Shown here one piece after another: positions 2,294-44,262 of a stretch of 64,000 bases of DNA; positions within the stretch are counted from its first letter, which is position 1, and every line of letters begins with the position of its first letter. The position numbers were made by a program, and so were the translations under genes. Below the pieces are notes generated by a model that saw only the letters and a list, made by a program, of their open reading frames with translations, did not search any database and was not told the DNA's origin. This stretch comes from Octopus sinensis (taxonomy: Eukaryota): contig NC_043026.1 in the NCBI RefSeq assembly GCF_006345805.1, positions 9,610,001 to 9,674,000 of the forward strand, in the 5' to 3' direction.

Positions 2294-2776
2294 ACCACTG
2301 AAATATACACACACACACCACACACACACATCAACTCACATCCTTCATACACCCACACGCACAAGAAGCAAAGATCCTAAAGAAAATAAAATACGAAAAA
2401 ATTTAATAAAAAAAAAAAAATCTAAATTTCATACCGCGTTCATCAACGTATAAGATGCATTCACACTTAAGATGCATTCACGCTTAAGATGCACCCCAAC
2501 TTCATATTTTGTGGAAAAAATGAACAAATTGAATATTTCTTCTCAGTCACTCAGTATCTCATCTATAATATGGTCGCATTAGAATGCATGACATTTTTTT
2601 GTTTGTTTAGGTTTAAAGGTTATTGTGCCGGTATATACGATAGATATGCATGAATGCCCTTCTTTGTGCTGTTTTTCAATGCAGACGTTACCTGAGGCAG
2701 CCAAAACAATTGCAATAAATATATTTTAACATGATGTCCGAGTGGTGATTTATGCTCATCGAATTTCCAGATTGGG

Positions 2777-4018: not shown

Positions 4019-4227
4019 GGTATGGTATCACGTCGTCACAACTGGTTTTAGAAATCTTAAATAAGGATTCACTTCGGTAGCACGCGGGTATAAAACTTTG
4101 ACGGTCTTTCAACAATCTCTTAAGTTGTATGGTTGGTCGATTTTCTTACGGTTATCCAAATTAAGCTGAGTATATTGAGGTAAAAAGAGCAGGGCTTTTC
4201 CAGTTATCTGAAATAAACAAATATATA

Positions 4228-6208: not shown

Positions 6209-7501
6209 TCATACATCTCTTATCATTTCATCCTGCATTGGCGCTGTCATCCATTTTATACCCTCTTCCTCACACTTCCTCGCCAATATCTCCATAAGTT
6301 CATATTCCACAACCGCGTAACTACCATCTTCATGTTCGCGCCATAAGTCTTTATTTATCAACCTTTTCGAGTTCTGAGTGTCTTTTTTCCTCGCAACACA
6401 TAAAAAAATAGGTCCTGGGCCTTTGTTTGTTCTGTGTGCCTGCGCTTGTTTTTGTTTTTCTTGTAGGCGGGGAGCGGGTGGAATCGCTGTTTGCAGGGGA
6501 AGGATGGGACTCAGAGGGTGTGGGTGGTGTTGGGGTTTCGTACTGTTTTCTTTTTTCCTTCTTTTTCTCTTTTTTCTCCCTTCTTCCCACTCTTGCTGGA
6601 TCTCCTCCTCTTCAGTTGCTTCCCTTTCTGTTAGGTTCTCCTTTTCTTTAGTGTCTTCCTTCTTTTGGGGCTCCGTAACGACTTCCTTTTCCTTTGGTGG
6701 GGGAGGGCAGTAGGCTCTTATGTGACCCCTCAGGCCACACTTATAGCACCTGGGCGCCCTGCCCTCCACCCACACTCTCATAATAATGTTCCCAGTTCTT
6801 ATACTATCCGTCAGCCTTTCTATTACTTCCGTCTCCGTCTGTATGTTCATGTCCAAGGTGGCACCTCTCGCGCCTTCGTATTTCATAGTGGCGTGGAGGA
6901 TGTCCACCTTTTCTTCGTTTCCCTTAATCACCGCAGCCGTTATATATTCACCCTCTAGGTGTGGAGGTATTCCCTCCACCCTAATTCTTGTGGTCCTTCT
7001 ATTTAAATACGAGGGTAGCAAGTATATTTTCTCCGTCCTCACCACCTTGGCTGCTATATTCCTGGCAACGTTCTCGCTTCTATATTGCACCGTTACAGTT
7101 CCGTACTCCATTCCTCTTGTCAGGTAAACAATTTCCTCTCCCGCCTGTTTCAATGCCTCTTCAATAGCTTCCATATTGACTATTTCCATCTTTCTTCCTC
7201 CATTCACGTACACTCTATATTTGATGGTTCTACGATTGAACCACTCGTCCCGCTTTGCTGGAGGTGACAGCTCGACTTCGCCGTTCTCCTCCTCCTTCAT
7301 AAATTCCTGGAAGCCTGGTAATTTAGCCAGGTCCACCTCTTTTTCTATCGACTTCTTCGTTGTTCCTGCGTAGGTACTTCCCAGCTTCCTGTCCATTTTC
7401 TCCACCGCGCTTTCCAACTCCTCCTCAGATGTTGAAAATTCTGACAAACTTCCAAATAAATCCTTCTCGGCCATCTCATCCGTTTGGGAGAGGCGGCTCA
7501 T
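6209..7501 (-). CDS. LINE ORF1/gag-like nucleic-acid-binding protein with CX2CX4HX4C zinc knuckle
   Basis: CYKCGLRGHIRAYC knuckle preceded by RRM-like segments (GTVTVQY; RTTRIRVEGIP) and followed by an E/K-rich tract; likely start ATG 7501 (the annotated extension to 7537 lies in the CR1 insert). Confidence 0.8.
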   Translation of the reverse strand: MSRLSQTDEMAEKDLFGSLSEFSTSEEELESAVEKMDRKLGSTYAGTTKKSIEKEVDLAKLPGFQEFMKEEENGEVELSPPAKRDEWFNRRTIKYRVYVNGGRKMEIVNMEAIEEALKQAGEEIVYLTRGMEYGTVTVQYRSENVARNIAAKVVRTEKIYLLPSYLNRRTTRIRVEGIPPHLEGEYITAAVIKGNEEKVDILHATMKYEGARGATLDMNIQTETEVIERLTDSIRTGNIIMRVWVEGRAPRCYKCGLRGHIRAYCPPPPKEKEVVTEPQKKEDTKEKENLTEREATEEEEIQQEWEEGRKKRKRRKKENSTKPQHHPHPLSPILPLQTAIPPAPRLQEKQKQAQAHRTNKGPGPIFLCVARKKDTQNSKRLINKDLWREHEDGSYAVVEYELMEILARKCEEEGIKWMTAPMQDEMIRDV

Positions 7502-7504
7502 AAT

Positions 7505-8162
7505 TTGCGTTGATTTGCAGTGACTTGCGTTGGACAAAGCATATCTCTAAAATTGTCAAGAAGGCCGAGGGTGTCTTGGCATCACTCAGCAAGACTTTTG
7601 TTAGCCGCTCTCCAGCCATCTATTTAAAACTGTATACAGCTATGGTACGACCACACTTGGAATTCGCATCATCAGTTTGGAATCCCTATCTTGCTCAGAA
7701 CATTGACCTCCTGGAATCTGTCCAGAGACGTGCAACCAAACGCATACCCTCCATCAGACACCTACCATATTCTGAGCGCCTTGTTTCCCTGGGCATGGAT
7801 TCACTGAAGCTCCGGCGTCTGGCGACGGACTTGGTAAACACCCACACAAGTTATCAACCACCTCACCAACAACAACACTGAACACCTTTTTGATCTCCAT
7901 GTGTCTAACACACGTGGACATGCCTACAAAGTCAGAAAACAATACAGCTCCCATGACTTTCGGAAACATTTTTTCACGCTCAGAGTTGCTGAAGCGTGGA
8001 ATAAACTGCCTGCGTGAGTTGTTGACTGCCATGACACTGCATCTTTTAAGGCCCACATGCTTTCCGAAATCTGCCGAAACTACACCTGATTATATATACA
8101 CTTTAGATGAGTTGTAGTGCACCTGAGCACTGTACACAATTATTATTATTATTATTATTATT
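7505..8162 (+). mobile_element. 5'-truncated CR1-clade LINE (RT C-terminus and 3' tail), frameshifted
   Basis: LYTAMVRPHLEFASSVWNPY, ESVQRRATK, RGHAYKV, FFTLRVAEAWNKLP motifs; (ATT)n tail; frameshift near 7850; possible ATAAT TSD at 7500-7504 and 8163-8167. Confidence 0.9.
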
Positions 8163-9474: not shown

Positions 9475-10240
9475 GGCGGCGAGCTGGCAGAACCGTTAGC
9501 ATGCCGGGCGAAATGCGTAACCGTATTTCGTCTGCCGTTACGTCCTGAGTTCAAATTCCGCCGAGGTCGACTTTGCCTTTCATCCCTTCGGAGTCGATTA
9601 AATAAGTACCAGTTACGCACCGGGGTCGATATAATCGACTTAATCCGTTTGTCTGTTCTTGCTTGTCCCCTCTGTGTGTAGCCCCTTATGGGCAGTAAAG
9701 AAATAGGTATTTCGTCTGCCGTTACGTTCTGAGTTCAAACTCCGCCGAGGTCGACTTTGCCTTTTATCCTTTCGGGGTCGATAAATTGAGTACCAGTTAC
9801 GCACCGGGGTCGATATAATCGACCAAATCCGTTTGTCTGTTCTTGTTTGTCCCCTATGTATGTAGCCCCTTGTGGGCAGTAAAGAAATAGGTATTTCGTC
9901 TGCCGTTACGTTGTGAGTTCAAATTCGGCCGAGGTCGACTTTGCCTTTCATCCTTTCGGGGTCGATAAATTAAGTACCAGTTCCGCACTGGGGTCGATGT
10001 AATCGACTTAATACCTATGTCTGTCCTTGTTTGTCCCCTCTGTGCCCCTTGTGGGTAGTAAAGAAATAGGTATTTCGTCTTTCTTTACGTTCTGAGTTCA
10101 AATCCCGCCGGGGTCGAATTTACCTTTTATCTTTTCGGAGATCGATAAATTAAGTACCAGTTGCATAGTGGGGTCGGCCTAATCGACTGCCCCCCCCCCC
10201 CGGCTCCCACCAAATTTCAGACCTTGTGCCTAGGTTAGAA
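9475..10240 (+). mobile_element. SINE family B with ~4 tandem body units
   Basis: Single head GGCGGCGAGCTGGCAGAA followed by repeated GTATTTCGTCTGCCGTTACG...GTAAAGAAATAG units. Confidence 0.9.
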
Positions 10241-10244
10241 AAGA

Positions 10245-11030
10245 AACACTAGCACGCCGGTACGGTGAAACAGCCTGTCCAGATGAATAAACCTGAGGCC
10301 TAGAGTCGCCCCCAGGCCATCAGACTCTACCAACCCATTATATAAAATCCGTGTGGAACCCCCACCGCCGGCGTTGCCCGAGTGCCGGAATAGCAAGAAG
10401 GCCTTACGGCACTCTTTATGCCACTCACTCGACCTCGGTCTACGAGAACACCAGGCTTCCTGTTCGCAAAAACTTTTGAACTCGGGGAACATTTGTCTGG
10501 CCAGCGGAGACCACACCCGTTCACTATCCAGGAGAATCCAGAGGTGCCTCAACCTCAACGCACGGCTGCGCATCATTAACCAAGGCATCCCTAAACCTCC
10601 CTTTAAAGGCTTTTGACAGCAGACAGAGCGTTTCACAAGTGGCGACCTGCCCTTCCACAAAAAGCGAAAGAGCTGTCTCTCCAACCTGATCAACCACGAA
10701 TCCGGACAGGGCACGACGGTCAGGCGGTAGGTAACGACCGATGCGATAAACACATTGGCCACCTCCGCCCTCCCTTTCAGGGATAGCCACCGCCAAGACC
10801 AGGTCTTGACTACTGCAGCCACCCTGCACAATACCTCCGTCCAGTTCTTCTCTATCTGGAGGACTGGTCCAAACCAAACTCCCAGCAACTTAACCGGTCC
10901 CTCAGTCCAGCGTTCAACAACGCTGACTGAAGGCATCGACTTGCCAACCCAGGTGCCGAGCTGCAAGCCGACCGACTTTCCCCGGTTAATCTTTGCTCCT
11001 GCCACCCCCTCGTAAGTCTGAATAGTCTTA
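10245..11030 (-). mobile_element. Tx1/L1-clade LINE ORF2 fragment (post-RT region)
   Basis: GAKINRGKS, VKLLGVWFG, WSWRWLSLKGRAEVANVFIAS, FRFLWKG, KGGLGMP motifs typical of L1/Tx1 ORF2. Confidence 0.85.
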
Positions 11031-11204
11031 CCCACTTGGTCTTGTATTTTAGTAATTCTCTTATGCCAGTTGACGGCTGTCGCGTTCCACCACCAGCCGC
11101 TGACGCAAAACTTTTCCTTTCTTCAATTTGGAAGGTCCTTTCTTCTGTCTTTCTTTTGGTGTTCGTAACTTTTGGTAATGTGTGTGTGTGTGTGTGTGTG
11201 TGTA

Positions 11205-30360: not shown

Positions 30361-30665
30361 TGGAGGTGTAATGGCCCAGTGGTTAGGGCAGCAGACTCGC
30401 GGTCATAGGATCGCGGTTTCGATTCCCAGACCGGGCGTTGTGAGTGTTTATTGAGCGAAAACACCTAAAAGCTCCACGAGGCTCCGGCAGGGGATGGTGG
30501 TGATCCCTGCTGTACTCTTTCACCACAACTTTCTCTCACTCTTACTTCCTGTTTCTGTTGTACCTGTATTTCAAAGGGCCGGCCTTGTCACTCTCTGTGT
30601 CACGCTGAATATCCCCGAGAACTACGTTAAGGGTGCACGTGTCTGTGGAGTGCTCAGCCACTTAC
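30361..30665 (+). mobile_element. SINE family C, 3'-truncated by the SINE B array
   Basis: Head and body up to CACTTAC. Confidence 0.85.
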
Positions 30666-32380
30666 AAGGACAGACAAATGGATTAAGTCAATTATATCGA
30701 CCCCAGTGCGTAACTGGTGCTTAATTTATCGACCCCGAAAGGATGAAGGGCAAAGTCGACCTCGGCGGAGTTTGAACTCAGAACGTAGCGGCAGACGAAA
30801 TACCTATTTCTTTACTACCCACAGGGGACAAACAAGGACAGGCAAACGGATTAAGTCAATAACATCGACTCCAGTGCGTAACTGGTACTTAATTTATCGA
30901 CCCCGAAAGGATGAAAGGCAAAGTCGACCTCGGCGGAATTTGAACTCAGAATGTAACGGCAGACGAAATACCCATTTCTTTACTACCCACAAGGGGCTAA
31001 ACACAGAGAGGACAAACAAGGACAGACAAACGGATTAATTTATCGACCCCGAAAGGATGAAAGGCAAAGTCGACCTCGGCGGAATTTGAACTCAGAATGT
31101 AACGGCAGACGAAATACCTATTTCTTTATTACCCACAAGGGGCTAAACACAGAGAGGACAAACAAGGACAGACAAACGTATTGAGTCAAGTACCAGTGCG
31201 TAGATGGTACTTAATTTATCGACCCCGAAAGGATGAAAGGCAAAGTCAACCTCGACGGAATTTGAACTCAGAACGTAACCGCAGACGAAATACCTATTTC
31301 TTTACTACCCACAGGGGACAAACAAGGACAGGCAAACGGATTAAGTCAATAACATCGACTCCAGTGCGTAACTGGTACTTAATTTATCGACCCCGAAAGG
31401 ATGAAAGGCAAAGTCGACCTCGGCGGAATTTGAACTCAGAATGTAACGGCAGACGAAATACCCATTTCTTTACTACCCACAAGGGGCTAAACACAGAGAG
31501 GACAAACAGGACAGACAAACGGATTATTTATCGACCCCGAAAGGATGAAAGGCAAAGTCGACCTCGGCGGAATTTGAACTCAGAATGTAACGGCAGACGA
31601 AATACCTATTTCTTTATTACCACAAGGGGCTAAACACAGGAGGACAAACAAGGACAGACAAACGGATTAATTTATCGACCCCGAAAGGATGAAAGGCAAA
31701 GTCGACCTCGGCGGAATTTGAACTCAGAATGTAACGGCAGACGAAATACCCATTTCTTTACTACCCACAAGGGGCTAAACACAGAGAGGACAAACCATGA
31801 CAGACAAACGGATTAATTTATCGACCCCGAAAGGATGAAAGGCAAAGTCGACCTCGGCGGAATTTGAACTCAGAATGTAACGGCAGACGAAATACCCATT
31901 TCTTTACTACCCACAAGGGGCTAAACACAGAGAGGACAAACAAGGACAGACAAACGGATTAATTTATCGACCCCGAAAGGATGAAAGGCAAAGTCGACCT
32001 CGGCGGAATTTGAACTCAGAATGTAACGGCAGACGAAATACCCATTTCTTTACTACCCACAAGGGGCTAAACACAGAGGACAAACAAGGACAGACAAACG
32101 GATTAATTTATCGACCCCGAAAGGATGAAAGGCAAAGTCGACCTCGGCGGAATTTGAACTCAGAATGTAACGGCAGACGAAATACCCATTTCTTTACTAC
32201 CCACAAGGGGCTAAACACAGAGAGGACAAAGAAGGACAGACAAACGGATTAATTTATCGACCCCGAAAGGATGAAAGGCAAAGTTGACCTCGGCGGAATT
32301 TGAACTCAGAACGTAGCGACGGACGAAATATCGCTAAGCATTTCCCCGGCGTGCTAACGATTCTGCCAGCTCGCTGCTTT
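30666..32380 (-). repeat. SINE B-derived tandem array, ~11 units of mixed length (~145-176 bp), single head at the distal end
   Basis: Repeated ATCGACCCCGAAAGGATGAAAGGCAAAGTCGACC; head GCTAACGATTCTGCCAGCTCGC at ~32352-32373. Confidence 0.95.
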
Positions 32381-33302: not shown

Positions 33303-33539
33303 GGATTTGTTAATAATGTCTAACCCGAGAAACATCGTTTGTGATGTTATTCCCGTTTTTTTGTTTTTTTTTTATCATTGTCGTTTCTATCAGTGACTTC
33401 ATAATAAATTATAACTCATTCGAAATAATGTGTTCTTATTCTTTCTTATATACAGATTCAATAAAAAATTTACATGAAAATGCAAAAATAAAATGGATGT
33501 TAAGAGGTTGGCAAATATTACGGATCTTTTCACTTTGAC

Positions 33540-34570
33540 CGGCAGATTTTTAAAATAATTCCTTTGCAACTAAACACTTTTAAACTTCGTATACTGGTAG
33601 AATGTGTTACATAAAACATCTTTTTCTCTTGGCTTTATTGAGAAAATTCTATAGTTTGTAAGATATGGATCTTTTCGGTTTGAGCGGCAGTTTTTAACAT
33701 AATTTCTAGGTAACTAAAAAATGTTAAACTTCGTATATTGGTAGAATGTGTTTATAAAACATCTTTTTCTCTTGGCTTTATTGAGAAAATTCTATAGTTT
33801 GTAAGATATGGATCTTTTCGGTTTGAGCGGCAGTTTTTAACATAATTTCTAGGTAACTAAAAAATGTTAAACTTCGTAAATTGGTAGAATGTGTTTATAA
33901 AACATCTTTTTCTCTTGGCTTTATTGAGAAAATTCTAGAGTTTGTAAGATATGGATCTTTTCGCTTTGAACGGCAGTTTTTAACATAATTTCTAGATAAC
34001 TAAAAAATGTTAAACTTCGTATACTGGTAGAATGTGTTACATAAAACATCTTTTTCTCTTGGCTTTATTGAGAAAATTCTAGAGTTTGTAAGATATGGAT
34101 CTTTTCGCTTTGAACGGCAGTTTTTAACATAATTTCTAGGTAACTAAACACTTTTAAACTTGCATACTGGTAAAAAAAATATTAAAAAAGGAAGTTTAAT
34201 ATTTTTTTAGTGTAGATGTGTTACATAAAACATCTTTTTCTCTTGGCTTTATTGAGAAAATTCTAGAGTTTGTAAGATATGGATCTTTTCGCTTTGAACG
34301 GCAGTTTTTAACATAATTTCTAGGTAACTAAACACTTTTAAACTTTGCATACTGGTAGAATGTGTTACATAAAACATCTTTTTCTCTTGGCTTTATTGAG
34401 AAAATTCTAGAGTTTGTAAGATATGGATCTTTTCGCTTTGAACGGCAGTTTTTAACATAATTTCTAGGTAACTAAACACTTTTAAACTTTGCATACTGGT
34501 AGAATGTGTTACATAAAACATCTTTTTCTCTTGGCTTTATTGAGAAAATTCTAGAGTTTGTAAGATATTT
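33540..34570. repeat. ~143-bp AT-rich tandem repeat, ~7 units
   Basis: AATGTGTT anchor at 33601, 33745, 33888, 34031; unit contains GAGAAAATTCTA and ATGGATCTTTTCG. Confidence 0.9.
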
Positions 34571-35865: not shown

Positions 35866-36059
35866 TGCCTTTTAATGGAGCATCAATGATTATGAAAGTC
35901 TCTGGTTTCGGACCAGACATTCCTATACGTACATGCATGCGTATATATATAATAATAATATATATATATATATATATATACACACAAACGTGCATATTTA
36001 AACATTACATAAACACACACACACACACACACATTCATATATATATATATATAATATAT

Positions 36060-36111
<52 letters not shown>

Positions 36112-36122
<11 letters not shown>

Positions 36123-36308
36123 GTGTATATACACATTTTCGTAAAACTGCAAAATTATCCCAGAACCGTTACACATATTTTTTTTACTTGTTTTCAGTGA
36201 TTTGAATGCGGCCATGCTGGAGCACCTCATTATGTGGGCTCAAAAGTGGGCTCATAATTTTGTTTATAGCCTTATTTCTATACATATATTCGTAAATATG
36301 TGTGTATG

Positions 36309-36377
<69 letters not shown>

Positions 36378-36611
36378 TATATATATATATATATATATAC
36401 CCACACACACACGTGTATATACACATTTTCGTAAAACTGCAAAATTATCCCAGAACCGTTACACATTATTTTTTTACTTGTTTTCAGTGATTTGAATGCG
36501 GCCATGCTGGAGCACCTCATTATGTGGGCTCAAAAGTGGGCTCATAATTTTGTTTATAGCCTTATTTCTATACATATATTCGTAAATATGTGTGTATGTA
36601 TGTATATATAT

Positions 36612-36643
<32 letters not shown>

Positions 36644-36670
36644 ATATATATATATATATATACTGTATAT
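36112..36670. repeat. ~290-bp near-identical tandem duplication bounded by (TA)n
   Basis: CACGTGTATATACACATTTTCGTAAAACTGC...CATATATTCGTAAATATG twice. Confidence 0.9.
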
Positions 36671-36818
36671 AAATATACACACACACACACAAAGAAAATG
36701 TGTTACAATCCTGATTGTTGGTGTGTAGAATGCAATGCATGCGATGCAGGTTCGATTCCTGGGTGAACCCATTTACAATAATAATATTAAGATCGAAGTT
36801 TAATATTTCTGGAAATAT

Positions 36819-39800
36819 TTATTTGTCAAAATAAAAGAAAGCAAAAGATTGACGTCCAGGAATAATTCCAAAAACCATCAAAGAATTGTCTGAAACATCC
36901 AAACCAAGAACTTCAAAGACTTCATTATCATCCTCACTGAGGAGTAAATATTTTGGATTATCTTCAGATATCAGGATTTCATTATCTTCAGATGTTTCCT
37001 CTTCAATATGTCGAGGTATTTCGTAAATATTGTTCTTTAAATCTGTTATATAAACACATTCACCAATTATGGTCAGACGAGGTCTTGGAATATAATATTC
37101 CAGACCATAAAACATTCCTCCTATTCTTATCCTCCTCACCAAAGACTTTTCCCTGAACCATTCCACAAAACACAAAGCTTCGCATTGTCCAAAATCCTCC
37201 TTCTTCATCTCCCTCCCCAAAACAACAACATCACCAAAAGATGTGACTCCCACACCATCCACACCATCATCTCCCTCAAACCTTCCCCATCTCCTCATCT
37301 CCCCACGATACACTTCATCTTTACATTTCCCATCTTTGATATCAACCACATCCACATAATAAGGGTCTAAGATGTCAAGGTCTTTGCAAAAATAGTAATA
37401 CTTGTTGTTTCTCCATATTCTTTGGTATTTCTTGTGTCTCTCTTCTTGAGTTATGTCTCTAATATCATGACCACCACACACGAGTTGATTGTAGTTGTAT
37501 TTATAAATCCTGTTGTAGTATTTCTCAGTTCTGATGGTTTTTAAACGACAGAGATCCCCGTTGAAGACCTTCATTTCTCTCCCAAAGGCGACAATGAAAC
37601 ATTCCTCTGTCCACTGACATATGTCCAGTGGTGGTCGTTGTTGTTGTTCATATTGAAGTATGTCCACTGTTGTTGTTGTTGTTCTGATTAATGTGACACT
37701 TTCTCGAAACATCAACACACTCACATTCTCACCTAACTTTATTAGTTTACTGTTCCAATCCCTAATGTCCCCACAATCATAATCAACAAGTTCCTCAAAT
37801 GCAGGAATGGAAAAAGGGACCATTGCTGTCCTATATGGAAGTCTCCTCACTGATATTTCATCAGTTCCTGAATTATTAATCTCCGCTATGTAATTACTAC
37901 ATCTCACCTTTAATCTACCTTTACCAATTATTTCACCGGATTTACCTCTTCTTTTTCCTCCTCTATCTCCATCTCCTCCTCTGTATTCCAATTTATTAAT
38001 TAATTCATTACTGAATATTTCCTTGTTCGTTTCAGATGTAATGGAAGGGAAACGAAGACCAGAATCAAGATTTAATAACGACACAGATTCCAGAATGTTC
38101 ACTTGGTCCCCATCAATCTTTATGCAATGACATTCAATCAATTCAATATGTACACACCAGTAAATACCCCCCACTTTTCTCCATATTACACCATAAGGGA
38201 TGAGACTCGACCAAACTTGAGATGTCTGCAAATCTTCTCCATTCAGTTGAAATATTTCTTTCCTTTTAGGAACCGTGGCCATTATGTGTGATTCTTGTGT
38301 AAAACACACACCACCAACTAAACTTGCAACATTTCTGTGACATAGCAACTGGCCATCTTCATCGAATATTTTAACATTTCCATTATTGGCTTTTTCACAC
38401 ACAACTGTCTTTCCTTCCTCAGAGACATCAAAATCTTTTACTTGAACAAGACATTCGTCTGTTTGTAAACGAGCAACCGGGAAGCTGTCTCGATTCACCA
38501 TAAACAACCCTTCAACATACGATTCATTCTCTCTCCTCGTGGGGCTTCCAATAAACCTTGGTCCTTTACAGTCTATACTGGAGAAATCTACGTCATCTTT
38601 ATAAATTCTTTTATTTAAAAATATTCTCTTGTATTCCCCATTCTGGGTCAAACAAAAAATGTTTCGATATCCAGATAAACCAAAATATTTCTCCCAATGA
38701 CAAAAAATGTACAAAAAACTGTCATCAATTGTCATCCTGTCATCAACACCCCTAAAAAAATAATCATACAGCATATAGTGTCTGACTGAATGTAAATATT
38801 GACCACCACTGTTGAAGAAAATGATGAATCTCCAGTTGAAGACAATGATGACATTTTCATCTGTAACTTTAATATCCAGGATTCTATCAGAATAATTTCC
38901 ATCTTCTTTTCTCATTCTTAATGGTTCAGGTATGTATATTTGTTTTATTTCCTCCACACTCGAATGTATTTCATCAATATCAACAAAATACAAATGAACT
39001 CCATCTCTCCAATCACTAAAAACCAGTTGATTGTTTGATAAAGAAGCCACACAACCATAATAATTTCTCGTTTGGTAAATTACCAACGACAATGGAAACT
39101 CCACTTTTAATGTCAACAGTTGGAGTTTATTATAAAAATTCCTATTCATAATGACCAGTGTGTTTGACTGCCATCGACACATTTTAATATAAGGATTAAC
39201 ATTCGCTTTGATCGAATCCAAAAGCTGACCATCCAATGTGAATATCTTAATGTTTTTATTCTTCTCGTCACATCCTGCAATCAGATTATTTTCAGTAAGA
39301 ACCAAATGATTAATCCTCGCTGGTCCTTTGTCTCCCAAATGTTTAGGGACAGGAATATGTCTGGCTTTATCAGAAACTGTCAGGTCCTGTAGATATAAAG
39401 TGGAAGACAACATTTCACTGACAGAAATGTTTCTGGAAAATACATCCACCAGGTCGATGTAATAATTAAGTTGATTATTAGTAACGAGATCATTAACCAC
39501 CAAATTATGATCAGTTATAGCAAACATACGGCTTCCGTCTATCAGATAGACAAACGTTTGGTCAATAGATCCACCTTGGAGACTGAGGGGACGTTTCACT
39601 TGGGACATTAAAACACTGGGGACCATTTGACGACCGCCATGACCACCACCACCTATTGTAGTGTTGTACTGAAAAACTTTTTCCTTAGTAACAATTAATA
39701 GCTTTTCTGTTTTCTTGTCTATTGATAATGATTTCACAAAAACAGGGATATTAATTGTCTTAATTACTTCAACTTGATTATAATAAATGATGGCTAAAAT

Positions 39801-42218
39801 GTTTAAATGTGATGGTTTATCACAATAACAAACAATTTCACCTTCACCCATCTTACACACCTGGACATAAGGCTGCCTTAATGACACACTTCTCACTGTC
39901 TTTGACAGGTTTCCGATGACTCTTAATTGTTTCTGTAGGGGTAATGTGACACCTATATGATTAGAATCCCATCGACATATATCTGTGGCTGTAGATGGCA
40001 GAGATAATCTGGACACAATGTCTCCTTCCTGAGAAATGTATAACAAGCAATCATGGTTGATGTCGGACACCACTAGCTGTCCATTGGACAGATTACATAT
40101 TTCGCCAATGACAAGTTTTTGGTCATTTTCCTTTTCTTTGAGTCGTAGATTTAGATTTCTGATATAAGGATTTTTCATGTGTAAACAACAGCCAGACGAC
40201 TGGTCATGATTCTTGTAAAGAAGAACCCTGTTGAGTTGAGTGTCCGGGACATAAAGTGTTCCTTGGAAAACAGCAATGTGAGGGTGAACAGGGAAAGGCA
40301 GTTCCCACTGCCATTTCATTTCTCCATATAGATTGTAACATCTGAGAATAGATTGTCTCCTGAAGAGGACATAGAAATAAACATTATCAGAGTAGATGTG
40401 ATGAGGGTAGCCATATAATGGAAGGTGTTTTTGAAAAAGTTCTTCACCACATGTGGAATAAAATACCATTTTATTTTCGCTTCCATCTACGACTACAAAA
40501 TTAATTGGAGTTGCAGCAATGCTGACATTATAATGTCCCAGAGAAATTCTTTCTATAATGTCAACTTTATCATCCTTCATCAAGAGGATATGGACCTCGT
40601 GTTTGTTTCCATTTGTGGTTAGAGTTAAACACTTATTTGATACAACATGACATAGTTTAATGTAATCAGTATGGACTTTCATTAAAGGGCCTTTCATTAG
40701 CCCAGGGTATGTGATACACTGAAATTCTTTGTTTTCACGGTAAAACACCAGAAATCCTTTAGAATTCATTCTACAAAAGCAAGAAGGAATCTCAAGGAAA
40801 GTTGAATTATTTTGGTTAATTATTTCTCCAGTCTCAGTGAATAATATAGCTTTATTATTCCTGTAGAATATTAATATAGAAGATGTAGACATAGGTAGAA
40901 TATTAGTCATGTTGTAGCAATCCTCAATATAAATATAGTTGTTCAATGTTGGGGTCCATAGCTGGGGGTTATATGACTGCCTGGGCCAAAAGTCTTCATT
41001 TGTTCCAATGATATGAAGGACATCAAAATAATCGGTTACAAAAATGTTTTTTTTGCCAACAGAAATATGGCGGCATTTCATGCCAATTTCTCTTGTTGTC
41101 ACAGCACCCGTACCTGAAATCCGATAAATAATAGGTCCCTGGAGGACATAAAAATGGTTTTGGTACACAGTGATGTGGCTTGGAATGTCCAGGGAATTGG
41201 TATCCACCTCAAATAACTGCTGGCCATCTACATTGTAACAGGTAACCCTGTTAATACTGGGAAAGGATACTAAGAGTTTATTTTGTGCTCCTACAGCAAT
41301 ATCTGTTGGTGTTTCTTTGGTTATGAATTTGTATTTTATTCTATTCTCTTCCCAGTCAATGATGTATATGGTCCGACCAAACATTTCTACACCTATAAGC
41401 GTAGAATGTTCCAAATAAGAAACTAAGATTAATCCTAGCTGAATTCTTTTGATTTTAAAACTTAATGGGTTGATAATAAGAATCATTTTTTTGAAGGGGA
41501 GGGTGGCCAGGACTGTATCTTCACTGATTCTGGTAAAATCAGTAACAGAAGATGAGCAATGAACTTCATTTCTGTTGCCGTCTCTTGTTACACAACATAT
41601 TGTCATACAGTGGCGGGAATATGTTACAATACCCCCTTGTATGACAACAATATTGGATATTGGGTTGCTTAAGTCTTCACCAGATTCCTTGATCTTTGCT
41701 TCTCTGGTCACAACTGGTCGAAGAGGCCGAAATTTTGTGGTTACTTTTGGTGGTTCAATGGTCTTGTGGTTGTATGGGTTACAAGTGACATAAATGTCAA
41801 AGAGTCTTTGTTGAAACCAATCAAGGTTTTGGTGAACAAAATCATTATTTGGTTTTGCAGATTCCAGAAATCTTGGCATTTTACGTTTGACATTATTTAA
41901 AATTCGAGATCCATTTAAACCCAGAGAGTCCATGTGATTACATTTATCCTTTACATAATCTATAAATGTATTGATGTGGTCTGTTTTGATTAGTGTTCGG
42001 TAACATGTCACAATATGAAGGAAACTTGGTAACATGGACTTTTCCTGTTCCTCAGATTTCTTTGTGTCTTTTCTTTCCTGTTCTTCTGTTTTCTTTGTGT
42101 TTTGTGTATGTAATATTTGGGGAAGAATTGGTGTAGTTTCCTTATAAATTGGTGTTGTATCACAGACTGTGGCAGGAACGAGAGCCAACATTTTGTTTTC
42201 TTCATTAATCTTCTCCAT
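36819..42218 (-). CDS. 1799-aa intronless protein: short N-terminal region plus six tandem NHL-like beta-propeller modules
   Basis: 5400-bp uninterrupted ORF in very AT-rich DNA; AAAATGG start with in-frame stop at 42234-42236; acceptor TTGTATTTCAG (exon starts 42335); AATAAA overlaps the stop; recurring blade motifs about every 235-290 aa (DICRWDSNHIGVTLP, DICQWTEECFIVAF, GVCFTQESHIMATVP, DFTRISEDTVLATLP). Confidence 0.9.
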   Translation of the reverse strand: MEKINEENKMLALVPATVCDTTPIYKETTPILPQILHTQNTKKTEEQERKDTKKSEEQEKSMLPSFLHIVTCYRTLIKTDHINTFIDYVKDKCNHMDSLGLNGSRILNNVKRKMPRFLESAKPNNDFVHQNLDWFQQRLFDIYVTCNPYNHKTIEPPKVTTKFRPLRPVVTREAKIKESGEDLSNPISNIVVIQGGIVTYSRHCMTICCVTRDGNRNEVHCSSSVTDFTRISEDTVLATLPFKKMILIINPLSFKIKRIQLGLILVSYLEHSTLIGVEMFGRTIYIIDWEENRIKYKFITKETPTDIAVGAQNKLLVSFPSINRVTCYNVDGQQLFEVDTNSLDIPSHITVYQNHFYVLQGPIIYRISGTGAVTTREIGMKCRHISVGKKNIFVTDYFDVLHIIGTNEDFWPRQSYNPQLWTPTLNNYIYIEDCYNMTNILPMSTSSILIFYRNNKAILFTETGEIINQNNSTFLEIPSCFCRMNSKGFLVFYRENKEFQCITYPGLMKGPLMKVHTDYIKLCHVVSNKCLTLTTNGNKHEVHILLMKDDKVDIIERISLGHYNVSIAATPINFVVVDGSENKMVFYSTCGEELFQKHLPLYGYPHHIYSDNVYFYVLFRRQSILRCYNLYGEMKWQWELPFPVHPHIAVFQGTLYVPDTQLNRVLLYKNHDQSSGCCLHMKNPYIRNLNLRLKEKENDQKLVIGEICNLSNGQLVVSDINHDCLLYISQEGDIVSRLSLPSTATDICRWDSNHIGVTLPLQKQLRVIGNLSKTVRSVSLRQPYVQVCKMGEGEIVCYCDKPSHLNILAIIYYNQVEVIKTINIPVFVKSLSIDKKTEKLLIVTKEKVFQYNTTIGGGGHGGRQMVPSVLMSQVKRPLSLQGGSIDQTFVYLIDGSRMFAITDHNLVVNDLVTNNQLNYYIDLVDVFSRNISVSEMLSSTLYLQDLTVSDKARHIPVPKHLGDKGPARINHLVLTENNLIAGCDEKNKNIKIFTLDGQLLDSIKANVNPYIKMCRWQSNTLVIMNRNFYNKLQLLTLKVEFPLSLVIYQTRNYYGCVASLSNNQLVFSDWRDGVHLYFVDIDEIHSSVEEIKQIYIPEPLRMRKEDGNYSDRILDIKVTDENVIIVFNWRFIIFFNSGGQYLHSVRHYMLYDYFFRGVDDRMTIDDSFLYIFCHWEKYFGLSGYRNIFCLTQNGEYKRIFLNKRIYKDDVDFSSIDCKGPRFIGSPTRRENESYVEGLFMVNRDSFPVARLQTDECLVQVKDFDVSEEGKTVVCEKANNGNVKIFDEDGQLLCHRNVASLVGGVCFTQESHIMATVPKRKEIFQLNGEDLQTSQVWSSLIPYGVIWRKVGGIYWCVHIELIECHCIKIDGDQVNILESVSLLNLDSGLRFPSITSETNKEIFSNELINKLEYRGGDGDRGGKRRGKSGEIIGKGRLKVRCSNYIAEINNSGTDEISVRRLPYRTAMVPFSIPAFEELVDYDCGDIRDWNSKLIKLGENVSVLMFRESVTLIRTTTTTVDILQYEQQQRPPLDICQWTEECFIVAFGREMKVFNGDLCRLKTIRTEKYYNRIYKYNYNQLVCGGHDIRDITQEERHKKYQRIWRNNKYYYFCKDLDILDPYYVDVVDIKDGKCKDEVYRGEMRRWGRFEGDDGVDGVGVTSFGDVVVLGREMKKEDFGQCEALCFVEWFREKSLVRRIRIGGMFYGLEYYIPRPRLTIIGECVYITDLKNNIYEIPRHIEEETSEDNEILISEDNPKYLLLSEDDNEVFEVLGLDVSDNSLMVFGIIPGRQSFAFFYFDK

Positions 42219-42850
42219 TTTATGAATATAGAATTATTATCTTTTTCTGTTAAATATATTCTTTTCTGTGGATTTTTTTTTCTTCCTTTCGAATACAATT
42301 TATCTCTTCAAAATTCACTAATTTTTACATGAAAGCTGAAATACAATGAAAACTTTATTAGTTTTGTGAAAAGCTTTTAATAAAATAGTATTTACTTGAT
42401 TCATTCAAACAATTTCAAGGAAAACAGACATTTCATTAAATATATTTAGTAAATTGTTTAATTGACAGTGAAGTTAAACATTTAAACTGTTTTCAATGGA
42501 ATAATCATTAGAAATAAAACTTGAAGATATAAATACACCATTATCTTTATTGACTGAATATAAGTGATGGTGAAAAGTTTTGGAGTAAGAAGGAATATAA
42601 ATATTTTGTTGAGGTTATTTCTACAGATATTATCGGTAGAAATTATAGCCAGGACTGATTTCCTGCTACAACATTTCATATCGAAATGTCAGACGGAAAC
42701 AAACAATGAGATCAAAGAGAAAAACATCTGTTGTTTGTTTACATCTGACATCTCGATAGGAAACGTTTTAGCAAAAAATCAGAGCCAACTATAATTTCTA
42801 TGGAATATCAATAGAATAATGTGAAAAACACTGCTAACAATGTAGAATGT

Positions 42851-42967
42851 GAAATCTTAAGAACAGGAAAAGTCCATGTTACCAAGTTTTCTTCATATTG
42901 TGACATGTTACTGAACACTAATCAAAACAGACCACATCAATACGTTTATAGATTATGTAAAGGATAA
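42851..42967 (+). pseudogene. Inverted 117-bp duplicate of codons ~53-92 of the 1799-aa ORF
   Basis: Reverse complement of 41944-42060 with 5 mismatches, two creating stops (GAG>TAA, CGA>TGA). Confidence 0.9.
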
Positions 42968-43399: not shown

Positions 43400-43659
43400 C
43401 TTTCTACTATAGGCACAAGGCCTGAAATTTTGGGCGTTGGGGGTTAATTGATTACATCACCCCCTAGCCCCTAACTGGTTCTTGTTTTATCAATCCCAAA
43501 AGGACAAGGGGCAAAATCAACCTTGGCGGAATTTGAACTCAAAACGTAAACTTGGAAGAAATGATGCAAAGTATTTTGTCTGGCATTTTGTAACAATTCT
43601 GCTTGTTCGTCACATTAATAATGATGATGATGATGATGATGATGATAATGATGAATAAC

Positions 43660-43696
<37 letters not shown>

Positions 43697-44228
43697 TTAG
43701 CAGCAGCAGCAGCAAAAACAACAACAGCAATTTCTTTTATTTTTTTTAATATGATAAAAATGATTTCAAGTTTTGGCACAAGGCCAGCAAGTTCAAGGAA
43801 GGGGCCAGTCTATTACACTGACCCCAGTACTCAACTAGTACTTAATTAATCGATCCGAAAAGGATGAGAGGCTAAGTCAACCTTGGTGGAATTTGAACTC
43901 AAAATGTAAAGATGGACAAAATGCCGCTCAACATTTTGCTTTGCATCCTCACAATTCTGCCAGCTCATCACAGTAGTAATAATAATAATAATAATAATAA
44001 ATAATAATAATGATAATGATAATAATAAATAAATAATAATAATAAATAATAATAAATAATAATAATACTTTCTTACTATAGGCACAAGGCCTGAAATTTG
44101 GGGTGAGGGGACTAGTAAATTACATTGCCTCAATTGCATAACTGGAACTTATTGAATCGACCCCAAAAGGATGAAAGGCAAAGTTGACCTTGGTGGAATT
44201 TGAACTCAGAATGTAGTGCAGATGAGTC

Positions 44229-44262
<34 letters not shown>

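What the first reader, a model, noticed from the sequence alone, without database searches (positions are those of the whole stretch)
36819..42335. Intronless 1799-aa protein built from six highly diverged NHL-like beta-propellers
Seen: an intact 5.4-kb ORF in a TE-saturated region. Modules start at about aa 183, 434, 701, 968, 1257 and 1490. Each has blade 1 (I..L.NG.LVV.D..N..L...G), blade 2 (DFTRISEDTVLATLP / CFCRMNSKGFLVFY / DICRWDSNHIGVTLP / KMCRWQSNTLVIM / GVCFTQESHIMATVP / DICQWTEECFIVAF) and a Tyr-led blade 3 (YIKLC, YVQVC, YGCVA, YGVIW, YNRIY). There is no signal peptide, TM helix, RING or B-box. Knowledge: this blade pattern resembles the C-terminal NHL-like propeller of the expanded molluscan TRIM/B-box proteins, normally one per chain; TRIM-NHL propellers bind RNA or protein ligands. 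Inference: a cytosolic multivalent sensor, decoy or scaffold (immunity or RNA control), possibly of retrogene origin. I do not recognise it as a described family. Best candidate for a new system in this window.
Basis: partly seen in the sequence, partly recalled or inferred. Interest (0 to 1): 0.85.

Follow-up and report, generated by a model that had tools for sequence, protein, structure and literature searches.

The report
Octopus six-propeller NHL-like protein family
This octopus gene encodes a 1799-residue protein made of six tandem NHL-like beta-propellers derived from the C-terminal domain of mollusc RING/B-box proteins; it belongs to an unnamed, fast-evolving, octopod-only gene family in which two propellers vary strongly on one face, as expected of a binding surface under selection to change.

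Summary
Each of the six modules is homologous, in register, to the C-terminal NHL propeller of mollusc RING/B-box proteins (hhalign probability 92-99%, P 5e-7 to 6e-21). AlphaFold2 models modules 1, 2, 4 and 6 as propellers of 21-24 strands; module 3 is half resolved and module 5 is poor.

It is not a one-off. About 40 clusters of full-length and fragmentary copies exist in three Octopus species, plus Argonauta, and none has a name or a paper.

New findings:
- The paralogues are module-scale mosaics.
- Modules 4 and 6 and the N-terminus are hypervariable, while modules 2, 3 and 5 are homogenised.
- In module 4 the loops alternate strictly between conserved and hypervariable, so one face varies.
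- dN/dS in modules 4+6 is 1.9-2.5 among close copies.
- Open frames and in-frame indels show coding constraint.

Not supported: a retrogene origin. Untested: expression and the ligand.

Best reading: a RING-less, TRIM-derived intracellular recognition scaffold with two diversifying propellers.

The parts
36819..42218 (-). Single-exon CDS, 1799 aa plus stop (stop codon at 36819-36821)
   Evidence: It is 100% identical to the parts kept by the RefSeq model LOC115226813 of Octopus sinensis (P0005). Full-length single-exon paralogues exist in O. vulgaris.
41673..42218 (-). N-terminal region, aa 1-182: disordered head, three predicted helices (aa 55-145; window 41784-42056), then a conserved linker HKTIEPPK..KFRPL (aa 151-166)
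   Evidence: AF2 (helices at pLDDT 50-63, low confidence). The N-terminus comes in several unrelated types among close paralogues (9-33% identity, dS about 1.0-1.3) that are swapped at about aa 150. No homology to the TRIM coiled-coil was found.
40920..41672 (-). Module 1 (aa 183-433), NHL-like propeller, under purifying selection
   Evidence: hhalign against the single-propeller profile: 94.3%, P=9.5e-8. AF2 gives 21 strands at pLDDT 70-87. dN/dS is 0.15-0.35, and there are two types at 67% identity.
40119..40919 (-). Module 2 (aa 434-700), NHL-like propeller with a classic last-blade motif LYVPDTQLNRVLLY
   Evidence: hhalign 93.8%, P=1.6e-7. AF2 gives 24 strands at pLDDT 70-84.
39318..40118 (-). 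Module 3 (aa 701-967), NHL-like propeller with a Gly-rich disordered insert at aa 856
   Evidence: hhalign 97.6%, P=4.7e-12. AF2 resolves the first 18 strands or so, and the rest is below pLDDT 50. dN/dS is 0.32-0.72.
38451..39317 (-). Module 4 (aa 968-1256), hypervariable NHL-like propeller: every paralogue has its own version, and one face (b-c and d-a loops) is variable
   Evidence: hhalign 99.3%, P=6.2e-21. AF2 gives 24 strands. Loop entropy alternates at 0.75 vs 1.93 bits, p=1.4e-12. dN/dS is 2.0-2.3 among close copies. dN in the variable loops is 0.18-0.24, against 0.06 elsewhere in the module.
37752..38450 (-). Module 5 (aa 1257-1489), homogenised module: the first half is NHL-like, then comes a disordered basic/Gly-rich insert (RGGDGDRGGKRRGKSGE at aa 1413)
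   Evidence: hhalign 92.5%, P=4.9e-7 over module residues 13-142 only. AF2 is poor here (pLDDT 25-55, about 12 strands). It is 91-95% identical across the close subgroup, with dS 0.01-0.075. Generic WD40 proteins also hit its first blade weakly.
36822..37751 (-). Module 6 (aa 1490-1799), second hypervariable NHL-like propeller with last-blade motif VYITDLKNNIYEI
   Evidence: hhalign 97.1%, P=6.2e-11. AF2 gives 24 strands, with pLDDT up to 92. dN/dS is 1.7-2.8 among close copies. The same face is variable once a merged d+a strand is split, p=2e-6; this split was made post hoc.
42219..42851 (-). Conserved 5' flank (633 nt) shared with O. vulgaris paralogues: probable 5' UTR or promoter, with a possible splice acceptor (TTGTATTTCAG) about 120 nt before the ATG
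   Evidence: Colinear blastn at 90-93% identity to L001 and L002. The function is inferred.
36273..36818 (-). Conserved 3' flank, with ATTAAA 15 nt after the stop
   Evidence: The poly(A) signal is a sequence match only.
42851..42967 (+). 117-nt inverted copy of the gene's own coding nt 159-275 (window 41944-42060), found only in this copy
   Evidence: 96% complementary arms. Absent upstream of four O. vulgaris paralogues. Its significance is unknown.

Best explanation
SHOWN. The gene encodes a protein with no predicted signal peptide or TM helix. It has a short helical N-terminal region followed by six tandem six-bladed beta-propellers. Each propeller descends from the NHL-type C-terminal propeller of the mollusc RING/B-box (TRIM-like) proteins, and the RING, B-box and coiled-coil have been lost. 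The gene is one of dozens of single-exon paralogues in octopods. The paralogues sit in loose clusters, duplicate at the DNA level, exchange module-sized segments, and are kept open by selection. Within the protein the labour is divided. Modules 2, 3 and 5 are kept nearly identical between paralogues, and module 1 is under purifying selection. Modules 4 and 6 and the N-terminus differ in every copy. In modules 4 and 6 the variation sits on one propeller face.

INFERRED. The variable faces of propellers 4 and 6 are ligand-recognition surfaces driven to diversify. By strand order they are the b-c and d-a loops, the 'top' face that binds RNA in Brat and LIN-41. The conserved propellers and the linker dock constant partners or hold the array together, and the swappable N-terminal helices couple the array to different outputs or oligomeric states. 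The family would then act as an intracellular, multivalent recognition scaffold in a genetic conflict, most likely against viruses or mobile elements. That would make it functionally analogous to TRIM5/finTRIM-type restriction factors, but without its own E3 ligase domain.
For: Homology:
- An exhaustive profile search found, outside the family, RING+B-box+NHL proteins aligned through their NHL region (P0064, E=3.7e-9).
- All six modules match that single-propeller profile in register (92.5-99.3%; reversed controls P>=0.0097).
- The single-propeller profile in turn retrieved 15 proteins, 12 of which are recorded with PF01436.

Fold:
- AF2 gives 24-strand propellers for modules 2, 4 and 6 and 21 strands for module 1.
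- Foldseek E-values reach 3e-21 against tandem-propeller proteins.

Family and constraint:
- 40 clusters, all from Octopus, plus Argonauta.
- None of 2000 neutral simulations keeps the frame open, and CDS indels come in threes while flank indels do not.

Mosaicism:
- dS ranges from 0.01 to 1.3 between modules of one gene pair.
- Module types assort independently.

Diversification:
- Module 4 loops alternate at 0.75 vs 1.93 bits (p=1.4e-12).
- Modules 4+6 have dN/dS 1.9-2.5 (Fisher p 0.0014-0.0064).
- Every paralogue has its own module 4.
- A sister lineage (P0044) is 99.6% identical between O. vulgaris and O. sinensis and 93.9% to O. bimaculoides. The window protein's best matches are 87% (O. 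vulgaris) and 70-78% (O. bimaculoides).
Against: - There is no expression evidence. None of the family members whose sources were shown comes from a run (Logan) assembly, whereas the single-propeller relatives do.
- No ligand, localisation or immune link was tested.
- The dN/dS values are pairwise Nei-Gojobori estimates on only 11-16 synonymous differences. The three pairs are not independent, and gene conversion distorts dS.
- The face assignment rests on strand order in AF2 models of moderate confidence (mean pLDDT 58-66), not on coordinates. For module 6 it needed a post hoc strand split.
- Modules 1 and 2 show no clear face bias.
- Many copies are truncated, so part of the family is decaying.
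Confidence: 0.45

Rival explanations
1. A multivalent RNA-binding regulator. Like the NHL domains of Brat, LIN-41/TRIM71 and Mei-P26, the propellers would bind RNA motifs on their top faces. Six propellers plus basic or RGG-like inserts would give a combinatorial mRNA-binding platform for post-transcriptional control, and the paralogues would recognise different RNA sets.
For: - The modules descend from TRIM-NHL-type propellers.
- Disordered basic/Gly-rich inserts occur in modules 3 and 5 (RGGDGDRGGKRRGKSGE here; RRRRR..KKKKR in paralogues).
- The variable face is the one that binds RNA in known NHL domains (established knowledge).
Against: - Regulators of endogenous mRNAs are usually conserved single-copy genes. 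This subfamily changes 13% of its residues between sister species and has dN/dS>1 in two modules.
- No RNA-binding test or electrostatic analysis was done.
- This rival overlaps with the best explanation if the RNA is foreign.
Confidence: 0.2
2. A constitutive structural or trafficking scaffold of the multi-propeller kind (as DDB1, IFT-A, EML or Utp proteins are). The extra copies would be redundant duplicates drifting under relaxed constraint.
For: - Foldseek's best matches are such scaffolds.
- The P0044 lineage is conserved (93.9-99.6% between species).
- Overall dN/dS of 0.5-0.8 is compatible with relaxation.
Against: - The Foldseek matches have TM of only about 0.2 and reflect the generic fold.
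- Relaxation does not explain the strict alternation of conserved and hypervariable loops in module 4.
- It does not explain dN>dS confined to modules 4 and 6 while module 1 sits at 0.15-0.35.
- It does not explain why long frames stay open in many copies.
Confidence: 0.12
3. A rapidly evolving reproductive or self/non-self recognition protein (gamete interaction, allorecognition), which would also produce clustered, positively selected paralogues.
For: Clustered expansion, fast evolution and surface-restricted variability.
Against: No signal peptide or TM helix, so an extracellular recognition role is unlikely. No tissue data are available.
Confidence: 0.08
4. Non-functional or selfish DNA: either a decaying segmental-duplication family whose ORFs are annotation noise, or the cargo of a mobile element.
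For: - The region is rich in interspersed and tandem repeats.
- Many truncated copies exist.
- No transcripts were seen here.
- Some annotated models are fused to hAT-like or zinc-finger domains.
Against: - The 5.4-kb frame is open in at least five sequenced copies at 7-30% divergence, while 0 of 2000 neutral simulations stay open.
- CDS indels are in frame.
- Module 1 is under purifying selection.
- The six-module architecture is kept from Octopus to Argonauta.
- There is no transposase, RT or integrase domain.
- No terminal repeats bracket the gene.
- Flanks are colinear between copies.
Confidence: 0.05

Closest known systems
Mollusc RING/B-box proteins with a C-terminal NHL propeller, TRIM-NHL-like (e.g. 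P0064, CAE1315789.1 of the cuttlefish Acanthosepion pharaonis; NHL protein KAL3857364.1 of the bivalve Sinanodonta woodiana)
   Same: Each of the six modules is homologous, in register, to their C-terminal propeller. They share the blade motifs (I..L.NG.LVV.D, DIC.W...I.VTLP, Y..VA) and a last-blade NHL signature. The CDS is single-exon in both.
   Different: Those proteins have one propeller preceded by RING, B-box and coiled-coil, and are 280-860 aa long. The window protein has six propellers and no RING or B-box, and its N-terminal helices show no detectable homology to their coiled-coil.
Canonical TRIM-NHL proteins (Brat, LIN-41/TRIM71, TRIM2/3/32; Pfam NHL PF01436)
   Same: A six-bladed propeller of four-stranded blades. 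The face that varies here is, by strand order, the face that binds RNA in Brat and LIN-41 (established knowledge).
   Different: The window protein does not reach the Pfam NHL threshold. It is not conserved across animals, and it has no E3 ligase module.
Diversified TRIM restriction-factor families (primate TRIM5alpha, fish finTRIM/bloodthirsty)
   Same: A lineage-specific clustered expansion, with positive selection concentrated in surface loops of the C-terminal recognition domain. This is a 'works like' comparison based on established knowledge.
   Different: Their recognition domain is B30.2/SPRY, not NHL. They have one domain per chain and keep the RING. No antiviral activity was tested here.
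Tandem multi-propeller proteins (DDB1, IFT-A subunits, Utp21, LRP2/LRP4 YWTD arrays)
   Same: Several beta-propellers in one chain. They are the top Foldseek matches, with E down to 3e-21.
   Different: There is no sequence homology and TM is about 0.2. Those are WD40 or YWTD propellers, conserved across eukaryotes, and the LRP arrays are extracellular with EGF spacers.

Membership tests
NHL-repeat beta-propeller (Pfam PF01436) | Match to the NHL repeat HMM at Pfam's gathering score | tested here: not met
   No NHL hit for the window protein even at E<=10. The paralogue P0044 scores 18.5 bits against a cut-off of 20.
NHL-repeat beta-propeller (Pfam PF01436) | Demonstrable homology to domains that do pass the NHL threshold | tested here: met
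   The family profile hits P0064 at E=3.7e-9 (NHL 29.1 bits), P0070 (32.9 bits) and P0068 (22.1 bits). All six modules match their alignment at 92.5-99.3%. That alignment retrieved 15 proteins, 12 of which are recorded with PF01436.
NHL-repeat beta-propeller (Pfam PF01436) | Six blades of four antiparallel strands in about 250-300 residues | tested here: met
   AF2 gives 24 strands in modules 2, 4 and 6 and 21 in module 1. This is inconclusive for module 3 (18 strands resolved) and module 5 (about 12 strands, low pLDDT).
NHL-repeat beta-propeller (Pfam PF01436) | Closest structural neighbours are solved NHL propellers | tested here: inconclusive
   Only multi-module models could be searched, and the top Foldseek matches are tandem WD40 or YWTD proteins.
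TRIM (tripartite motif) proteins | N-terminal RING finger | tested here: not met
   No RING family in Pfam at E<=10.
TRIM (tripartite motif) proteins | B-box zinc finger | tested here: not met
   No B-box hit. The N-terminal 182 residues have no Cys/His cluster.
TRIM (tripartite motif) proteins | Coiled-coil after the B-box | tested here: inconclusive
   Helices are predicted at aa 55-145 with low confidence. The profile comparison with the coiled-coil and linker of the RING/B-box relatives gives P=0.16, the same as the reversed control.
Diversifying immune-type recognition families (works-like comparison) | Lineage-specific clustered multigene family | tested here: met
   40 clusters restricted to octopods. 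O. vulgaris copies lie at 9.57, 21.9, 22.0 and 22.7 Mb of one 29-Mb chromosome, two of them 5 kb apart.
Diversifying immune-type recognition families (works-like comparison) | Positive selection focused on a surface of the recognition domain | tested here: met
   This rests on pairwise estimates only; recombination-aware site models were not run.
Diversifying immune-type recognition families (works-like comparison) | Expression in immune tissue or induction by infection; binding of a foreign ligand | not testable with these tools
   No expression data or binding assays are available here.
Retrogene | Intronless copy of an intron-containing parent, with a poly(A) remnant and target-site duplication | tested here: not met
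   The relatives P0064 and P0044 are also single-exon. Recent copies share kilobases of flank on both sides. No A-tract follows the 3' end. TSDs were not searched for systematically.
Transposable-element protein | Transposase, RT or integrase domain, and terminal repeats bounding the copy | tested here: not met
   No such domain. No LTR- or TIR-like pair brackets the gene.

The most novel reading that the evidence does not exclude
Octopods have built a new class of intracellular recognition receptor by concatenating six TRIM-derived NHL propellers. Two 'variable' propellers (4 and 6) and a swappable N-terminal module are diversified by positive selection and by cassette-like exchange between clustered paralogues, while the other propellers are kept uniform by concerted evolution. 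This would be a germline-encoded combinatorial repertoire, analogous in logic to TRIM5/finTRIM or NLR/VLR diversification, and would point to an unrecognised arm of cephalopod innate immunity or genome defence.
Probability: 0.3. Interest if true: 0.85.

Novelty: new variant of a known kind. Interest (0 to 1): 0.62.

Why it matters
Cephalopod innate immunity is poorly mapped, and octopus genomes are known for lineage-specific expansions (protocadherins, C2H2 zinc fingers, GPCRs). This family is not among those described. It combines three things:
- a known binding fold (the NHL propeller) in an architecture not seen elsewhere among 1.84 billion representative proteins at HMMER sensitivity: six per chain, with no E3 module;
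- a clear split between constant and hypervariable propellers;
- the genomic signatures of a conflict-driven repertoire: clustering, module exchange, variability confined to one face, and dN>dS.

If the members are expressed, the family offers a tractable entry to non-self recognition in cephalopods and a natural experiment in how propeller surfaces diversify. If they are not expressed, it is still a striking case of long ORFs maintained in a repeat-rich genome.

Tried and rejected
- Self-BLASTP of the protein found no internal hit at E<=10. The repeat needs family profiles to be seen.
- Pfam and PDB sequence searches of the whole protein found nothing usable: WDR90, 18.5 bits, below cut-off; nitrite reductase, E about 2.4.
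- N-terminal helices against the coiled-coil and linker of the RING/B-box relatives: P=0.16, equal to the reversed control. The idea that they are a coiled-coil remnant is dropped as unsupported.
- The second word-indexed protein search, using the single-propeller alignment, gave only 15 hits and no informative names. It served only to show that the profile is NHL-class.
- An exact-sequence look-up of the window protein in public assemblies found nothing on record, so no transcript-like contig was found. Cluster look-ups of ten family fragments traced all of them to Octopus genome annotations.
- Four literature searches found no paper on the family or its locus names.
- Pfam on the two flanking TE-like ORFs gave no hit. 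'TE-saturated' is therefore supported only by the many dispersed and tandem repeats.
- TE or retrogene origin was considered and rejected.
- The WD40 hits of the profile search cover only one blade of module 5 and are generic.
Full report
**1. Observation**

Window 36819..42218 (minus strand) is an open frame of 1799 codons. An in-frame TAA lies 18 nt upstream of the ATG. It is the only ORF above 450 aa in the 64-kb window.

The spacing between successive blade-2 motifs is regular, at 229-291 residues. Pfam and PDB sequence searches find nothing significant. Self-BLASTP finds no internal repeat. On its own, the sequence looks like an orphan.

**2. Origin and family**

A search of 5.8 billion protein clusters gave 40 hits, all from Octopus vulgaris, O. 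sinensis and O. bimaculoides. All are labelled 'uncharacterized' or 'hypothetical'. P0005 (O. sinensis LOC115226813) is 100% identical over the parts it keeps, so the window is O. sinensis.

That RefSeq model is shorter (1377 aa) for two reasons. It splices out aa 1220-1563 through canonical AG|GT ... CAG|A sites, and it leaves the ORF at a GTGAAT donor after aa 1719. The full-length frame is the one conserved in the paralogues.

An exhaustive HMMER search with a profile of modules 3-6 against 1.84 billion representatives added two things:
- a full-length six-module protein from Argonauta hians (P0043, 1913 aa, 38% identity to P0001);
- a divergent paralogue lineage (P0044). This lineage is 99.6% identical between O. 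vulgaris and O. sinensis and 93.9% to O. bimaculoides. By contrast, the window protein's best matches are 87% (O. vulgaris) and 70-78% (O. bimaculoides).

No six-module protein was found outside octopods, although the cuttlefish proteome is in the library. Many further hits are fragments annotated in Octopus genomes.

**3. The six-fold repeat is real**

Ten of the 15 pairs have P<0.01. The best are 4 vs 6 at 2.4e-6, 3 vs 6 at 2.6e-6 and 3 vs 4 at 4.4e-5, and nearly all of the ten align in register. Thirty comparisons against reversed modules gave no P below 0.028.

**4. What the modules are**

Outside the family, the exhaustive search hit proteins of 280-860 aa that aligned to a single module:
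- P0064, a cuttlefish protein with RING, B-box and NHL, aligned through its residues 387-622 (E=3.7e-9);
- P0066, with B-box and NHL;
- P0068 and P0070, with NHL (P0070 is from a bivalve);
- P0076, with RING and B-box.

Against an alignment of seven such C-terminal domains, the six modules score as follows, all in register:

| Module | hhalign probability | P |
|---|---|---|
| 1 | 94.3% | 9.5e-8 |
| 2 | 93.8% | 1.6e-7 |
| 3 | 97.6% | 4.7e-12 |
| 4 | 99.3% | 6.2e-21 |
| 5 | 92.5% | 4.9e-7 |
| 6 | 97.1% | 6.2e-11 |

Reversed controls were all P>=0.0097. Used as a query, the single-propeller alignment retrieved 15 proteins, 12 of them recorded with PF01436.

The window protein itself does not reach Pfam's NHL threshold, so 'NHL-like by descent' is the accurate wording. 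A few WD40 proteins hit one blade of module 5 only. That match is generic.

**5. Structure**

AF2 was run on aa 968-1799 with a 30-sequence alignment (mean pLDDT 65.5, pTM 0.68):
- module 4 has 24 strands (pLDDT about 70-88);
- module 6 has 24 strands (pLDDT up to 92);
- module 5 is poor: about 12 strands plus a disordered insert.

AF2 on aa 1-967 gave mean pLDDT 57.7:
- the first 50 residues or so are disordered;
- helices span aa 55-145 at low confidence;
- module 1 has 21 strands and module 2 has 24 (pLDDT 70-87);
- the first 18 strands of module 3 are resolved.

Foldseek against the PDB returns tandem-propeller proteins (IFT-A, DDB1, Utp21, LRP2/LRP4) with E down to 3e-21 but TM of only about 0.2. 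This confirms the generic fold and does not indicate a specific relationship.

There is no TM helix and no conserved signal peptide. The N-terminal helices show no detectable homology to the coiled-coil of the RING/B-box relatives.

**6. Genomic behaviour**

In O. vulgaris the copies lie at 9.57, 21.89-21.93, 22.02 and 22.66 Mb of one 29.2-Mb chromosome (OX597841.1). Two of them are 5 kb apart. P0044 lies on another chromosome.

The coding sequence is a single exon in every copy checked. It is also a single exon in the cuttlefish RING/B-box/NHL relative.

The window shares colinear flanks with two O. vulgaris copies, interrupted by repeat insertions. The shared flank runs 633 nt continuously upstream, with blocks out to about -4.7 kb, and about +2.1 kb downstream. 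Recent duplication was therefore at the DNA level, and the retrogene idea is not needed.

No transposase or RT domain is present, and no terminal repeats bracket the gene.

**7. Selection**

- **Coding constraint.** At 3.75-30% neutral substitution, 0 of 2000 simulated copies keep the frame open. At least five sequenced copies at 7-30% divergence are intact. CDS indels come in threes and sixes, while flank indels are 1, 2, 5, 8, 14 nt and so on.
- **Mosaicism.** Within a single pair of genes, dS ranges from about 0.01-0.03 (module 5) to 0.77 (module 1) or 1.26 (N-terminus). Module types assort independently: N-terminus A with m1 A, A with B, B with B, and C/D/E with A. Homology to two other copies starts only at codon 150 or so, where the N-terminal types join.
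- **Division of labour.** In the close subgroup, modules 2, 3 and 5 are 81-95% identical. Module 1 has two types. Module 4 is unique in every copy (79-81%, then 60-64%). Module 6 has four types. The N-terminus falls to 9-33%.
- **dN/dS.** Module 1 is at 0.15-0.35 and module 3 at 0.32-0.72. Modules 4 and 6 are at 1.7-2.8 among the three closest copies. For modules 4+6 together, dN/dS is 1.9-2.5 with Fisher p=0.0014-0.0064.
- **Variability confined to one face.** The 23 inter-strand loops of module 4 alternate without exception between conserved (mean 0.75 bits) and hypervariable (mean 1.93 bits), with Mann-Whitney p=1.4e-12. dN in the variable loops is 0.18-0.24, against 0.06 in the rest of the module. 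With the NHL strand order a-b-c-d, which I read from the motif alignment, the variable loops are b-c and d-a. These form the conventional top face. Module 6 shows the same pattern (1.71 vs 1.06 bits, p=2e-6) once a 16-residue strand is split into its d and a parts. That split is justified by homology with module 4, but it was made post hoc. Modules 1 and 2 show no significant bias.

Caveats:
- The dN/dS values are pairwise Nei-Gojobori estimates with few synonymous changes.
- The gene pairs are not independent.
- Gene conversion perturbs dS.
- Faces were inferred from strand order, not from coordinates.

**8. Mechanism**

Shown:
- a RING-less chain of six NHL-derived propellers with a helical N-terminal region;
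- a clustered, recombining, coding-constrained octopod family;
- two propellers whose one face diversifies.

Inferred:
- Propellers 4 and 6 are ligand-recognition surfaces in a genetic conflict.
- The uniform propellers and the conserved linker (HKTIEPPK..KFRPL) provide constant contacts.
- The exchangeable N-terminus provides different couplings.

I put about 0.45 on this recognition-scaffold reading. Within it, foreign nucleic acid or viral protein is the likeliest ligand class. About 0.2 goes to an endogenous RNA-regulatory role, and smaller weights go to a constitutive scaffold, a reproductive or allorecognition protein, or non-functional DNA.

**9. What remains open**

- Expression is untested. 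None of the family members whose sources were shown comes from a run assembly, although the single-propeller relatives have transcript-like contigs.
- Some RefSeq members carry isoform labels. By my knowledge of the Gnomon pipeline this usually implies transcript support, but I could not verify it.
- The ligand, the localisation and the completeness of module 5 are unknown.

**10. Verdict**

The structural interpretation is supported and has been sharpened. The functional interpretation is plausible but unproven, and the retrogene origin is not supported.

Novelty: a new variant of a known kind. It uses a known fold and has a known ancestor family, but the six-propeller architecture and the evolutionary mode are previously undescribed.

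Noticed in passing
window 42851-42967 (partner arm 41944-42060): A 117-nt inverted copy (96% complementary) of the gene's own coding nt 159-275 lies 633 nt upstream of the ATG, exactly where colinearity with the O. vulgaris paralogues ends. It is absent upstream of four O. vulgaris copies. If co-transcribed it would form a long hairpin (a possible dsRNA, editing or RNAi substrate); otherwise it is a rearrangement scar.
   Followed up: partly
window 36819-42218, aa 1220-1563 and after aa 1719: The RefSeq model of this gene (P0005, 1377 aa) removes 344 codons through canonical GT-AG sites inside the ORF and exits the ORF at a GTGAAT donor. Either cryptic splicing yields an isoform lacking module 5 and the start of module 6, or the model is an artefact.
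   Followed up: partly
window about 42673-42748 (455-530 nt upstream of the ATG): A short palindrome (ATCGAGATGTCAGATGTAAACAAACAA ... TTGTTTGTTTCCGTCTGACATTTCGAT) sits in the conserved 5' flank and is also seen as a self-inverted match in the O. vulgaris copy. It could be MITE-like or regulatory.
   Followed up: no
window 36037-36691: A 290-bp unit with (TA)n runs is tandemly duplicated 130-780 nt downstream of the stop (98% identical copies). A tRNA-like SINE fragment lies about 50-90 nt after the stop, and ATTAAA lies 15 nt after it.
   Followed up: no
L003 21460-22245 (O. vulgaris OX597841.1, P0012 locus): Two extra tandem copies of the last 240 nt or so of the CDS lie just downstream of the stop codon of this paralogue (81-82% identity to its own CDS). 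They may be traces of unequal exchange in module 6.
   Followed up: no
aa 856 (window about 39630-39653) and aa 1413 (about 37930-37980): Disordered Gly-rich or basic inserts occur in modules 3 and 5 (GGGGHGG; RGGDGDRGGKRRGKSGE). In paralogues the module-3 insert becomes poly-Ser, RRRRR..KKKKR, or a 70-residue Ser/Gly repeat. These may be NLS-like or RGG-like; this was not tested.
   Followed up: no
window 2620-4080: ORFs of 150-413 aa run on both strands across a coding-like minisatellite of roughly 30-nt units (GLAARSPARK-type and PSVNE-type repeats), in a local GC peak of about 0.50.
   Followed up: no
window 6209-7537 (-) and 10235-11035 (-): One ORF of 442 aa has a CCHC knuckle (CYKCGLRGHIRAYC). 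A second ORF of 266 aa reads like the tail of a non-LTR reverse transcriptase. Neither has a Pfam hit at E<=0.01.
   Followed up: partly
window 30664-32330 and 33522-34568: There are two satellite-like arrays. The first has 146/168-nt units, with 96% matches in its best stretch; its unit looks SINE- or tRNA-derived, and three weak copies recur at 43450-44230 upstream of the gene. The second has 143-144-nt units, with up to 99% matches. A 514-nt (CA)n tract lies between them.
   Followed up: no
P0010, P0015 (O. vulgaris annotation): Two annotated family members are fused to C2H2 zinc fingers or to a DUF4371 (hAT-like) domain. These are probably merged gene models and not real architectures.
   Followed up: no
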